A stretch of DNA of 64,000 bases from Botryllus schlosseri. Its lineage: Eukaryota. The stretch's first letter is position 1, and each line of letters opens with the position of its first letter. Shown here one piece after another: positions 6,101-9,011 of the stretch. The position numbers and the translations under genes were made by a program. A model generated the notes under the pieces. It worked only from the letters and a program-made list of their open reading frames with translations. It did not search any database and was not told the origin of the DNA. Location of the stretch: positions 6,758,001 through 6,822,000 of the forward strand of contig CM119382.1 of NCBI GenBank assembly GCA_051294905.1, given 5' to 3'.

Positions 6101-9011
6101 TTAAGAGGATTTGTCCTCTTTTTTGAAAATTTAGGTCAGATTTAGAGCAAACTGCGAGTGATATGCCGCAAAATAGCACAGAAGTGACGCTCCGGCGGGT
6201 TTTTTGGAGTGAAAAACGCTGACTTTAGCTCTGAGCGAAAATATGACCTTTTTTTTAGTCATCCACCTGACAATGTGGAGAAAAAAACGGTATTTTGAGC
6301 TCTGAGCGGAAAGATGACCTTTTTTTTAGTCAACCGACCGCAAAGTGGGTAAAGTAAACTGGTTTTTGTGAATTCTTTTCCGGTTTTGCAAGTCTGAAAT
6401 TTCTGAAAAAGTGTCCTCTTTTTAGATTTCCAAAATATGGTAAGCCTAGTATAGCGCATTGGACCCGGGATAGCGATCGAGGCTAGACACGGGAGACATT
6501 GAACGCTTAATTGTGTAATTCGACGACAGCTTCGTTTTGATTTTCCCTAGGAGGGGCCAATGATATCACCAATGAAATGAATGGCTCGATCGCTTGTTTC
6601 AATGGGTTAGTGTGACGACCCAATGTTCCACCCCTTCGCCAGTTCTGAATACGCCTTCCTTATAGCTTCGGAAATTCAGCAGAATTCGCCAGGAGCATAA
6701 TAATCGATCACTTTGTACCCTGTTATACTATTTGGAGAATTTTCTCTAATGGTACAGGGGCTACGAGAACTAGAGGCCCAAGTTTTCCTTTAAACGGTAA
6801 ACGATTAGCATCCATTTCGAACGGCAAGAATTTTCTTTAATATTCTATGAAATTATTCCAGTATAAATTTTGCGCTTTCTCAAGGTTCTCATCACCGATA
6901 TGTTACCAGACATGTCTGCATGACATAAAAAGAGCCACCGACGGTGTGTAGGCGGTGTGTATTGTGTAGGAATTTACCTGTCATTCATGTTGTAATTTGC
7001 CGTTTATTTCTAGATGTTATCCCGCGTTGCACGTCAAAAATGATATACTTCATTGACGAGTTTTCAGTAGGCAATTCAAAGGCAATTAATTCTGCCATCG
7101 GCAAACATCTGTTGGATAATCCGATTTGTGCGAATAATTATCGAGACGACCGATTTCGAATCGTAGGTCGAGGCCGTTCACAATTCCATTTGTGTGCCTT
7201 GGAATCAACTTTTATCAAAATACACCAACCAAAACTCTGTCAACAAAAGGAGTTCGTGTATCACCTAAAAATAGTACATTGAACGCTCTCTCATTCGAAA
7301 TTTCATGCTGGTGACGTCATATTTTGTGATACGATTGTTGATATACAATGTTCTTTCCAATTCTCTACTAGTTGCTGACGATTACCCCTGACGAGTGTCA
7401 GCCGAAAATATTCGGGTTCATTTCAATATGAATATACTATTTAATAGTTTTCAGTATGTTCGTTTAAATATTGATGTTTTTGCGTATTACTAGTTATCAC
7501 TTTACACCCAAAATCCATATACTCAGTACCCGCATATCCTTGCCTATAGATGGCGGAGACTAGCCTACCAGAGTTCTACGACAATTATCACGCGGTGCAC
7601 GCTTTTATTCGCGTAATGGAATCGTTGCTGATCATGCTCCGGTATCATATCGAGAAATTCGGGATGAAGCACAAGGATACAACGCAGGTAAGGCTGGTGT
7701 GGCATAAATTGCGACTCAATTGCATTTGGAAGTAGCAATCTTAACGACACGTCAAAAATACGTCAAGGGGAAGTAATAATAACAAGAATATAATGATTTA
7801 TACTTACTACTTTTCAAAATCTAAATTGGAAAAAAGGTAACGGGGTTTGCCTTAAGAACTGTTTAACAAGGTTGTAATGACTCGAGTCCGACTCTAGTCG
7901 CGATTATTTTGTGACTTGACTTGACTCCAGTCATTTTTTTCGAATGCGTAAAATGACTTGACTCGAATCAATTTTTGTATTGACTCGAGTGTGACTCGAG
8001 GCTAGGAATGCCAAAGACAGTCATGTCATTGTAACTTCGAAGAATACAGTGAAGTTACAATTGGTATTTCGTCTATCAGTCATGATACTTGGGAAATAAG
8101 GCCAGAAACTGTTAAGACTATAAAGACAATTACTTTATTTTGAATGCGAGCCATTATATATCACTTGGGTAAAAACTATAAAAGTGAGATTGACTTGTGA
8201 CTTGGTGACGACCATGTTGTTCAAGTCGAAGCGGAAGTAGTCGAAAAGCAAAGAGAGAGAGGAGAGATAAAGAGACTTTAATTTTCATCCAACCAAGATA
8301 CATAACAAACAGACGGCAATGATGGAGGTACAGAAGATATGCATGCACATTATTCGGTATCAGATAGGAATGATCGATACGACATTGAAGGTCAACCAGC
8401 CTGATCACACCCGCATTAAACAAGAACACTTGTCTCTATACAGTCTGGCTGTAAAAAATGTTAGGTAGAAAAGTAAGATTAAAGGAAAAAATGAAACGAT
8501 GGTGTCGATAGATTAAAAGTTCACTGGAGCAATGTCTGGGCGAGGTAGGGCAACACTGTTAATATGACGCAAGAGGTAATTAAGTAGGTATTTTTTAATC
8601 TATCATAAGGCAATTCACGTAGTTACGCAAGTCCACCGCATTCTTTCTCAGCTCTCCTCAAAGTGCCGCAGAAACCTCAAAAAACTCTCAAAACTCTGCA
8701 AGAAATTCCCGGTCTTCCACCCACGCTACATGCTGCTCAAAGCCTACCACTATATTCTCGCCGACCGCCGCACCAAAGCCCGCGAGAAGGTCACGCAGGC
8801 CGCCACCATCTCCAGATACTGCGGTAACCGCGTCGACCGGCAGTACGCGCTGCACAGTCTGCAGTTGTGGTTCTCGCCTGCCACGATCGCTAGCGAGGAT
8901 ATAGATTACTGGGAGACGCACTGCGAGGATATGCCAGACTGGGAGACGGCGTCTAGTAACGAACACGAGAACAGGCTGTACAGCTTGAAGCTTCCCGTCA
9001 ATCGGCGTTGA
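147..9011 (+). CDS. ADCY10: Soluble adenylyl cyclase (ADCY10/sAC-like), C-terminal TPR-like region; 5' part lies outside the window
   Basis: Phase-consistent GT-AG exon chain: 147-298, 369-473, 1188-1294, 1351-1492, 2279-2473, 4211-4322, 4384-4491, 5668-5781, 5838-5932, 7550-7687, 8652-9011 (TGA). The peptides ALRILSCRLP, QVRCLSYIWQILL, LVAMMQVN, YYYSACMDVLLEAGY and FPVFHPRYMLLKAY...DMPDWE match, in order, my recollection of the vertebrate sAC C-terminus (ALRLL, QTVCLSLLW, AVMMQMN, FYFVCLDILLYSGF, PVFCPRLYHLMAY...LPSWE). Confidence 0.85.
735..880 (+). mobile_element. Degenerate tRNA-derived SINE
   Basis: B-box-like GGCTCAATCCCC followed by the core GGCCGAGTCAGACCAAAGAC...CCTGCTCGGTGCTCAGCA, shared with the copy at 52869. 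Confidence 0.55.
3250..4176. mobile_element. hAT MITE, GACTCGAGTC-rich family
   Basis: TIR CAGTGTTGGGAT/ATCCCAACACTG; perfect 8-bp TSD CTATATAG (3242-3249, 4177-4184); inverted sister copy at 37037-37986. Confidence 0.9.
6079..6448. mobile_element. hAT MITE
   Basis: TIR TAGGCTTACCAT/ATGGTAAGCCTA; 8-bp TSD GTATAGCG (6071-6078, 6449-6456). Confidence 0.9.
7060..7445 (+). mobile_element. Penelope-like retroelement 3' remnant (GIY-YIG C-terminus plus pLTR)
   Basis: Translation SAIGKHLLDNPIC...FRIVGRGRSQFHLCALESTFIKIHQPKLCQQKE fits the C-terminal half of PLE GIY-YIG endonucleases; near-identical copy at 49340-49676. Confidence 0.75.
7374..7417 (+). ncRNA. Minimal type-I hammerhead ribozyme motif (PLE-associated)
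   Basis: ACCC-CUGACGA(7388-7394)-G..C-GAAA(7404-7407), palindromic stem III AAUAUU, C17 at 7413, then GGGU. Upstream GCUGAC (7374-7379) is complementary to GUCAGC in loop II. Confidence 0.7.
7867..8216. mobile_element. Older GACTC-rich hAT MITE
   Basis: Degenerate TIRs CAAGGTTGTAA/TGACGACCATG; GACTCGAGTC arrays; imperfect TSD CTGTTTAA/TTGTTCAA. Confidence 0.65.

What the first reader, a model, noticed from the sequence alone, without database searches (positions are those of the whole stretch)
7374..7417. Hammerhead ribozyme motif in sense inside an adenylyl cyclase intron
Seen: a Penelope pLTR carries the complete hammerhead core (CUGACGA / GAAA / UUC), a 4-bp stem I, a one-pair stem II and a palindromic AAUAUU stem III. 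It also has a perfect 6-nt complement (GCUGAC/GUCAGC) between the 5' leader and loop II. It lies on the coding strand of the ADCY10-like pre-mRNA, about 135 nt upstream of exon 7550. Established: Penelope-like elements encode minimal type-I hammerheads, many of which cleave as dimers through a palindromic stem III. Inference: the sAC pre-mRNA could be cut at 7413 in a concentration- or dimer-dependent way, and the 6-bp pseudoknot may be a lineage-specific stabiliser.
Basis: partly seen in the sequence, partly recalled or inferred. Interest (0 to 1): 0.75.

Follow-up and report, generated by a model that had tools for sequence, protein, structure and literature searches.

The report
Penelope retrotransposon hammerhead in sAC intron
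The motif is real: it is the small self-cleaving "hammerhead" RNA motif carried by a dead, truncated copy of a very abundant Penelope-like jumping gene that landed in an intron of the soluble adenylyl cyclase gene. Nothing suggests that it cuts or regulates that gene's RNA.

Summary

- **What it is.** The motif lies in a 377-bp, 5'-truncated copy (7070-7446) of a young Penelope-like element (PLE), flanked by a 10-bp target-site duplication. About 5,000 near-identical hammerhead copies occur in this genome.
- **Where it sits.** A spliced transcript contig shows it is in sense in the 1,617-nt second-to-last intron (5933-7549) of an ADCY10/sAC orthologue.
- **The 6-bp pairing.** The leader/loop-II pairing is a real structural element. 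It sits at a fixed distance from the core, and four of its six pairs change on both sides between sister PLE families. With G10.1-C11.1 it replaces the usual helix II hairpin. A one-pair stem II with a six-pair pseudoknot was tested experimentally in type II hammerheads (Perreault 2011).
- **Cleavage of the sAC pre-mRNA.** This is not supported:
  - I found no partner hammerhead in 50 kb of the gene.
  - The AAUAUU dimer helix is very weak (-0.2 kcal/mol).
  - The predicted monomer fold hides the core.
  - The intron is spliced normally.
  - No read ends pile up at the cut site.

Other agents of this scan reported the same pseudoknot hammerhead in other windows of this genome. I reached it independently.

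The parts
7060..7069 (+). Left copy of the 10-bp target-site duplication GTTTTCAGTA
   Evidence: Identical 10-mer at 7447-7456.
7070..7446 (+). 5'-truncated, dead-on-arrival copy of a young Penelope-like element (end of ORF, 3' UTR/pLTR with hammerhead, 33-nt tail)
   Evidence: 7076-7448 is 98.9-100% identical to many genomic copies. The full unit is 2,692 nt between hammerheads, with an 860-codon frame. Pfam RVT_1 E=7.8e-9. Weak GIY-YIG hit, E=0.019.
7076..7282 (+). Remnant of the C-terminal end of the PLE ORF (after the GIY-YIG motif), stop at 7280-7282. The listed ORF 6944-7282 is a chance fusion with intron sequence.
   Evidence: Residues 38-41 to 111 of the window ORF match over 100 genomic copies at 92-96% identity. 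The part upstream is unique to this site. Homology starts at 7076.
7374..7379 (+). Leader box GCUGAC, the 5' strand of the pseudoknot (functional positions 10.2-10.7 of helix II)
   Evidence: Perfect complement of 7397-7402. Always 14 nt (15 in one family) before C3. Covaries in sister families: ACUAAC/GUUAGU, GCCGAC/GUUGGC, ACUGGC/GCCAGU, UCUGGC/GCCAGA.
7384..7387 (+). Stem I, 5' strand (ACCC)
   Evidence: Pairs with GGGU 7414-7417. Three stem I pairs change on both sides between families.
7388..7394 (+). Hammerhead core box C3-A9 (CUGACGA)
   Evidence: C3 U4 G5 A6 G8 A9 are invariant in 20 aligned copies from several families. N7 is C, U, A or G.
7395..7403 (+). Helix II region: G10.1 (7395), one bridging nucleotide U7396, pseudoknot 3' strand GUCAGC 7397-7402, C11.1 (7403)
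   Evidence: G-C is invariant in 20/20 copies. The pseudoknot helix is 94% paired against 24-42% when the partner columns are slid.
7404..7412 (+). G12 A13 A14 A15.1 (7404-7407) and the palindromic stem III AAUAUU (7407-7412)
   Evidence: GAAA is invariant. The inner pair is GC in 16 copies and UA in 4, so the palindrome is kept (AAGCUU or AAUAUU).
7413..7417 (+). C17 (7413; predicted scissile bond 7413/7414) and stem I 3' strand GGGU (7414-7417)
   Evidence: Position 17 is C or U, never G, in the aligned families. No cleavage was measured.
7414..7446 (+). 33-nt 'tail' beyond the scissile bond, including the element's first AUG (7428-7430)
   Evidence: Truncated copies end at the equivalent of 7446. 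5' pLTR copies continue into the ORF.
7447..7456 (+). Right copy of the target-site duplication
5933..7549 (+). Second-to-last intron (1,617 nt) of the ADCY10-like gene, hosting the insertion
   Evidence: A contig of run X1 joins 5932 to 7550 with GT..AG on the + strand.
7550..7687 (+). Second-to-last coding exon of the ADCY10-like gene
   Evidence: Joints 5932>7550 and 7687>8652. The reading frame is continuous across five exons to the stop at 9009-9011.
8652..9011 (+). Last coding exon, C-terminus of the sAC orthologue
   Evidence: It matches the extreme C-termini of 1,671-1,802-aa proteins carrying Guanylate_cyc + AAA_16 (TPR in P0002). One of them matches human ADCY10 structures at E=3e-96.

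Best explanation
Window 7070-7446 is a dead, 5'-truncated copy of a young and very abundant Penelope-like retrotransposon. It inserted in sense, with a 10-bp target-site duplication, into the second-to-last intron of the soluble adenylyl cyclase (ADCY10-like) gene.

It carries the element's own hammerhead motif. This is a minimal type-I hammerhead with a 4-bp stem I and a one-to-two-pair palindromic stem III of the dimer type. Helix II consists of the single G10.1-C11.1 pair. My inference is that this pair is stacked on a 6-bp pseudoknot between loop II and a box 14 nt upstream of the core, with one nucleotide bridging the deep groove.

The motif belongs to the retroelement's RNA life cycle. 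In full-length copies the scissile bond lies 14 nt before the ORF's first AUG, and successive sites are 2,692 nt apart. It could therefore trim pLTR or tandem transcripts to unit length, probably slowly and with help from a second copy or the element's protein. That role is inferred, not shown.

In the sAC intron it is a passenger, with no demonstrated effect on the host RNA.
For: - Sequence features.
- Copy identity of 96-100% and thousands of copies.
- Full unit with an RT/GIY-YIG frame.
- Target-site duplication.
- Spliced contig placing the insertion in a + strand intron.
- sAC identity of the gene.
- Covariation of the pseudoknot: 4 of 6 pairs change on both sides; 94% of cells are paired against 24-42% in slid controls.
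- Covariation of stem I, and retention of the stem III palindrome.
- Genome counts for leader position 1 against loop position 6: G..C 4,936, A..U 607, G.U 185, A..C 135.
- Core nucleotides are invariant, while N7 varies freely and H17 is C or U.
- Published precedent for a one-pair stem II with a six-pair pseudoknot, including compensatory rescue (PMC3088659).
- PLE hammerheads are known (PMC4209133).
- The Anolis PLE hammerhead cleaves only with its protein and leaves no read ends in RNA-seq (PMC11167929).
Against: - Self-cleavage of this variant has not been measured.
- Rfam hammerhead models give no hit.
- Nearest-neighbour folding prefers an inactive fold of -12.2 kcal/mol. By comparison, the nested hammerhead pairs evaluate to +0.1 and the pseudoknot helix, evaluated on its own, to -7.4 kcal/mol.
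- Every truncated copy keeps sequence on both sides of the scissile bond, so the RNAs that were copied had not been cleaved there.
- The families compared are related by descent and I chose them by hand from pattern hits, so the covariation counts are not independent events.
- The coaxial-stack geometry is inferred.
Confidence: 0.85

Rival explanations
1. One reading: the intronic hammerhead cleaves the sAC pre-mRNA after C7413, alone or as a dimer with another copy, and so modulates sAC expression.
For: - The core is intact and in sense in the intron.
- The covarying pseudoknot could supply the stem I/II contact that fast hammerheads need.
- PLE RNA is abundant in RNA-seq, so partners in trans exist in principle.
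Against: - No second hammerhead core on either strand in 40 kb upstream plus the first 10 kb of the window.
- The AAUAUU duplex is worth -0.2 kcal/mol, against -4.3 for the AAGCUU of sister families.
- The monomer MFE hides the core and C17.
- The intron is spliced correctly in run X1.
- No place with piled-up read ends at a summed depth of about 240.
- PLE mini-hammerheads are weak or protein-dependent in vitro.
- Intron cleavage by a slow hammerhead leaves splicing intact.
- The host gene had no coverage in the three raw-read runs, so this reading was not tested directly.
Confidence: 0.06
2. A built-in switch: loop II (GUCAG) pairs either with the catalytic box CUGAC (off) or with the upstream duplicate box GCUGACGA (on).
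For: In this family the leader repeats CUGACGA. In the nested model the CUGAC/GUCAG hairpin has a probability of about 0.76-0.79.
Against: - In sister families the leader box is not a core duplicate (ACUAACG, ACUGGCG, GCCGACG).
- Loop II can pair with the true core only through wobbles, or through 3 bp in the ACUGGC/GCCAGU family.
- The leader/loop-II pairing, by contrast, stays perfect.
- What is conserved is therefore the pseudoknot, not the alternative.
Confidence: 0.05
3. The conserved fold is mainly a recognition or binding structure for the element's RT/EN protein near the start site of reverse transcription, and catalysis is marginal or vestigial.
For: - Copied RNAs were uncleaved at this site.
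- In the Anolis PLE, hammerhead mutants do not affect insertion, and reverse transcription starts just downstream, giving the 'tail'.
- No read ends at the site.
Against: The invariant positions are exactly the catalytic ones, and N7 and H17 vary as in active hammerheads. A mere binding site would not need that.
Confidence: 0.15

Closest known systems
Minimal hammerheads of Penelope-like elements (Cervera & de la Pena 2014, PMC4209133; Lunse et al. 2017, not readable here)
   Same: - Located in the pLTR of an RT + GIY-YIG element.
- Type I, with a short stem I (4-5 bp).
- Conserved G10.1-C11.1.
- Palindromic mini stem III implying dimers.
- Thousands of mostly solitary truncated copies, plus inverted pairs.
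   Different: The described metazoan PLE hammerheads have a 6-8-bp hairpin helix II. Here only 7-8 nt lie between G10.1 and C11.1, and the helix is completed by a strand upstream of stem I (a pseudoknot).
Hammerheads with a pseudoknot stem I/II contact, especially the type II ribozyme with a one-pair stem II and a six-pair pseudoknot (Perreault et al. 2011, PMC3088659)
   Same: One-pair stem II. A six-pair Watson-Crick pseudoknot joins the nucleotides just 3' of 10.1 to the stem I side. In that study, function was proven by deletion and by compensatory mutants.
   Different: That ribozyme is type II (open at stem II; loop I pairs with a 3' tail), comes from bacteria or metagenomes, and has a stable stem III. 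Here the fold is type I (open at stem I; a 5' leader pairs with loop II), with a dimer-type stem III, in an animal retroelement.
Intronic hammerheads of amniotes (C10orf118 and RECK; PMC3088659)
   Same: Hammerhead in sense inside an intron. The C10orf118 one uses a 5-bp pseudoknot.
   Different: Those are single-copy, conserved across species at one locus, and cleave robustly as monomers. This is one of about 5,000 young repeat copies with no sign of locus-specific conservation.
Non-LTR retrozymes (PMC7229834; bioRxiv 10.64898/2026.07.22.740005)
   Same: Type-I hammerheads with a palindromic stem III in tandem short repeats related to PLE pLTRs. A 359-nt tandem deletion derivative of this very PLE exists.
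   Different: The window copy is a solitary truncated PLE tail, not a tandem retrozyme.

Membership tests
Hammerhead ribozyme | Core C3 U4 G5 A6 N7 G8 A9 ... G12 A13 A14, with A15.1-U16.1 and H17 not G | tested here: met
   All are present at 7388-7413. They are invariant across families, while N7 is any base and H17 is C or U.
Hammerhead ribozyme | Three helices around the core, supported by covariation | tested here: met
   - Stem I: 3 pairs change on both sides.
- Helix II: G10.1-C11.1 plus the pseudoknot, where 4 of 6 pairs change on both sides.
- Stem III: the palindrome is kept as AAUAUU or AAGCUU.
- Helix II has an unusual, pseudoknotted form.
Hammerhead ribozyme | Match to the curated covariance models (Rfam Hammerhead_1, _3, _II, HH9, HH10) | tested here: not met
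   No hammerhead hit at the gathering score or at E <= 10. This is expected for a hairpin-less helix II and a mini stem III.
Hammerhead ribozyme | Site-specific self-cleavage giving 2',3'-cyclic phosphate and 5'-OH ends | not testable with these tools
   The only indirect look found no pile-up of read ends in three RNA-seq runs.
Penelope-like element (EN+) | [quoted passage not shown] | tested here: met
   860-codon frame. RVT_1 E=7.8e-9, over the cut-off. The GIY-YIG hit is at the expected place but below the cut-off (E=0.019), with the motif VVYEY..YVGRT..R..H visible.
Penelope-like element (EN+) | pLTR or partial-tandem organisation, inverted 5'-truncated partners, 30-40-nt tail, hammerhead in the pLTR | tested here: met
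   - Hammerheads flank the ORF 2,692 nt apart.
- Head-to-head pairs occur.
- A 33-nt tail follows the scissile bond.
- This matches the descriptions in PMC8557442 and PMC11167929.
ADCY10 / soluble adenylyl cyclase (host gene) | N-terminal tandem class III cyclase domains like human ADCY10, a long STAND/TPR C-terminal part, and one transcript joining them | tested here: inconclusive
   - An exon 35.6 kb upstream on the same strand matches ADCY10 structures at E=1e-33.
- The window's last exon matches the C-termini of 1,671-1,802-aa cyclase + AAA_16 proteins (TPR in one of them).
- Five C-terminal exons are joined by a contig.
- Continuity of the whole 44-kb gene was not shown.

The most novel reading that the evidence does not exclude
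The pseudoknot-built helix II could make this Penelope hammerhead a self-sufficient, reasonably fast monomeric ribozyme. The thousands of copies lying in sense in introns, this sAC intron included, would then nick host pre-mRNAs and impose a genome-wide cost or a layer of regulation.
Probability: 0.06. Interest if true: 0.7.

Novelty: new variant of a known kind. Interest (0 to 1): 0.3.

Why it matters
Hammerheads in Penelope-like elements are well known, and so are pseudoknots as stem I/II contacts. The point of modest interest is their combination. Here an animal PLE mini-hammerhead has no helix II hairpin and completes that helix with a strand upstream of stem I. This could explain "core-only" motifs that standard hammerhead descriptors and Rfam models miss. 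It also offers a compact natural test case for protein- or dimer-assisted catalysis. For the sAC gene itself, the insertion looks inconsequential.

Tried and rejected
- **Rfam.** Scans at the gathering score and at E <= 10 found no hammerhead family, only chance hits.
- **Window ORFs.** Pfam on ORF 6944-7282 and on the exon ORF found nothing. ORF 6944-7282 is a chance fusion of intron sequence with the PLE ORF tail.
- **Host gene identity, first attempts.** PDB sequence searches with two other window ORFs were uninformative. The ESM Atlas on the last exon gave only TPR-like leads.
- **Lunse et al. 2017 (PMC5785218).** The paper is not held, so I could not check whether it already depicts this pseudoknot.
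- **Cis dimer.** No second hammerhead core in the 50 kb of the gene scanned.
- **Switch or decoy idea.** Not conserved in sister families.
- **RNA-seq.** The three raw-read runs gave zero depth on the unique intron and exon sequence. The host pre-mRNA itself could therefore not be examined, and reads over the PLE part come from all copies and both strands.
- **Not run.** No structure or complex prediction was needed.
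Full report
**Observation.** The sequence at 7374-7417 reads GCUGAC-GAUU-ACCC-CUGACGA-G-U-GUCAGC-C-GAAA-AUAUU-C-GGGU.
- stem I: 7384-7387 with 7414-7417
- core box: 7388-7394
- G10.1-C11.1: 7395 with 7403
- GAAA: 7404-7407
- palindrome AAUAUU: 7407-7412
- C17: 7413
- the six-nucleotide complement: 7374-7379 with 7397-7402

Rfam finds no hammerhead here, either at the gathering score or at E <= 10. That fits a motif with no helix II hairpin and a tiny stem III. The motif is not a chance match. 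The relaxed core pattern occurs 4,704 (forward) and 9,311 (reverse, overlapping) times in the 495-Mb genome, against 82 and 51 for the reversed-pattern control.

**What the surrounding DNA is.**
- Window 7283-7446 is 98-100% identical to dozens of scored copies, and homology to those copies begins at 7076.
- In longer copies, two hammerheads 2,692 nt apart flank an open frame of 857-860 codons. That frame has a reverse-transcriptase domain (RVT_1, E=7.8e-9). It also has a C-terminal GIY-YIG-like motif, with a weak Pfam hit at the expected place (E=0.019).
- Head-to-head pairs of truncated copies are common. Truncated copies all end 33 nt beyond the scissile bond, while 5' pLTR copies run on into the ORF.
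- This is the published anatomy of endonuclease-positive Penelope-like elements, including the "tail" (PMC8557442; PMC11167929).
- The window copy is bounded by a perfect 10-bp target-site duplication, GTTTTCAGTA, at 7060-7069 and 7447-7456. It is therefore a 377-bp dead-on-arrival insertion.
- The listed ORF 6944-7282 is a chance fusion of intron sequence with the ORF tail.

**Host gene.**
- A 483-nt contig of run X1 joins 4384-4491, 5668-5781, 5838-5932, 7550-7687 and 8652 onward. Every joint has GT..AG on the + strand.
- The joined exons give one open frame ending at 9009-9011.
- The hammerhead therefore lies in sense in the 1,617-nt second-to-last intron (5933-7549), 136 nt before the exon.
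- The last exon matches the extreme C-termini of 1,671-1,802-residue proteins with Guanylate_cyc + AAA_16 domains (TPR in P0002). One of them matches human ADCY10 structures at E=3e-96.
- An exon 35.6 kb upstream of the window on the same strand matches ADCY10 residues 17-161 at E=1e-33.
- The gene is thus an sAC orthologue. Continuity of the whole 44-kb transcript is inferred, not shown.

**The pseudoknot.** I fetched 40 variant copies chosen only by their core pattern. In these copies the best partner of the six loop-II nucleotides usually sits at one fixed place, 14 nt before C3 (15 nt in one family), and it changes together with the loop:

| Leader box | Loop II box |
|---|---|
| GCUGAC | GUCAGC |
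| ACUAAC | GUUAGU |
| ACUGAC | GUCAGU |
| GCCGAC | GUUGGC |
| ACUGGC | GCCAGU |
| UCUGGC | GCCAGA |

On an alignment of 20 copies:
- The pseudoknot helix is 94% paired, against 24-42% when partners are slid by 1-3 columns.
- Four of its six pairs change on both sides.
- Stem I has three such pairs.
- The inner stem III pair is GC or UA, so the palindrome is kept.

Genome counts for leader position 1 against loop position 6 are G..C 4,936, A..U 607, G.U 185 and A..C 135. Two caveats apply. The copies descend from a few families, and I left out copies whose upstream part is replaced or decayed. These numbers therefore show consistency between families, not independent events.

The catalytic positions are invariant, N7 takes all four bases, and H17 is C or U. 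That is the hammerhead's own signature.

My structural inference is as follows. C7402 and C7403 are adjacent, so the pseudoknot stacks directly on G10.1-C11.1 and gives a seven-pair composite helix II. The single nucleotide 7396 bridges the deep groove of the six-pair helix, which is the classical minimum for an H-type pseudoknot (general knowledge). The four-nucleotide linker 7380-7383 ties the far end of this helix to stem I, so it would hold stems I and II side by side.

**Comparison with what is known.**
- PLE hammerheads were described in 2014, with a 6-8-bp hairpin helix II, a short stem I, a palindromic stem III, very low activity even as dimers, and thousands of solitary copies (PMC4209133).
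- Pseudoknots joining stems I and II occur in about 40% of hammerheads of all three types. A type II ribozyme with a one-pair stem II and a six-pair pseudoknot lost activity when the pseudoknot was shortened and regained it with compensatory mutations (PMC3088659).
- The present motif looks like the type-I permutation of that architecture, combined with the PLE-type stem III.
- Craig et al. noted hammerhead "cores" with 7-17-nt spacers that fit no descriptor (PMC8557442).
- I could not read Lunse et al. 2017, so I cannot exclude that the variant is already drawn there.
- Other agents of this scan reported the same "pseudoknot helix" hammerhead on other windows of this genome. I saw those notes only after searches had led me to the same reading. 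I treat them as agreement, not as evidence.

**Does it cut the sAC pre-mRNA?** Nothing supports this.
- No other hammerhead core lies on either strand in 40 kb upstream plus the first 10 kb of the window, so there is no cis partner.
- The intermolecular AAUAUU helix is worth -0.2 kcal/mol, against -4.3 for the AAGCUU of sister families.
- The nearest-neighbour MFE of the 60-nt monomer (-12.2 kcal/mol) pairs CUGAC with GUCAG and CCGAA with UUCGG, hiding the core and C17. By comparison, the nested hammerhead pairs evaluate to +0.1 kcal/mol and the pseudoknot helix, evaluated on its own, to -7.4 kcal/mol.
- Correctly spliced mRNA across the intron exists.
- In three raw-read RNA runs, the PLE part had a summed depth of about 240 in two of them, from all copies and both strands equally. 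No place with piled-up read starts or ends was flagged.
- The host gene itself had zero coverage in those runs, so it was not tested directly.
- Every truncated genomic copy contains both sides of the scissile bond, so the RNAs that were reverse-transcribed had not been cleaved there.
- In the one PLE studied biochemically, the hammerhead cleaved only with the element's protein, was dispensable for insertion, and left no read ends in RNA-seq (PMC11167929).
- Intron cleavage by a slow hammerhead does not prevent splicing in vivo (as reported in PMC2995048).

**The switch idea.** Loop II might pair alternatively with the true core or with the upstream duplicate box. This fits only this family. 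Elsewhere the leader box is not a core duplicate, and the core/loop-II pairing degrades to wobbles or to three pairs.

**Verdict.**
- The identification (PLE pLTR hammerhead, sense, sAC intron, stabilising pseudoknot) is supported.
- The proposed regulation of sAC is unsupported and unlikely.
- The pseudoknotted helix II is a modestly new variant of a known kind, and this scan has already met it elsewhere in this genome.

Noticed in passing
L032:6590-7310 (G000:C1:37762000-37771999): Tandem 359-nt units bounded by the same hammerhead. Each unit is the first 252 nt plus the last 117 nt of the 2,692-nt PLE unit. This is an internal-deletion, retrozyme-like mini-element derived directly from this PLE.
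   Followed up: partly
window 7414-7446 and L045: In full-length copies the ORF's first AUG (window equivalent 7428-7430) lies 14 nt after the scissile bond. Cleavage would therefore leave an uncapped RNA with a 14-nt leader. All truncated copies keep a 33-nt tail beyond the bond.
   Followed up: partly
window 49144-49168 (-) and 49651-49675 (+): Two more cores of the same hammerhead family in inverted orientation.
   Followed up: no
window 12231-12302 (+): A tRNA gene (Rfam 56.7 bits) whose anticodon loop reads UGG (Pro), about 3.2 kb downstream of the sAC stop codon.
   Followed up: no
window ~6041-6640 and ~8031-8230: Two other very high-copy repeats in the last two introns of the sAC gene. 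The contig word depth is 10^3-10^4, with many loose ends at 6092, 6123-6126, 8172 and 8202. Their families were not identified.
   Followed up: no
G000:C1:22034516-22040105: Three hammerheads of the sister family (ACUAAC/GUUAGU) spaced 2,778 nt apart on one strand. This is a tandem array of a second PLE family.
   Followed up: no
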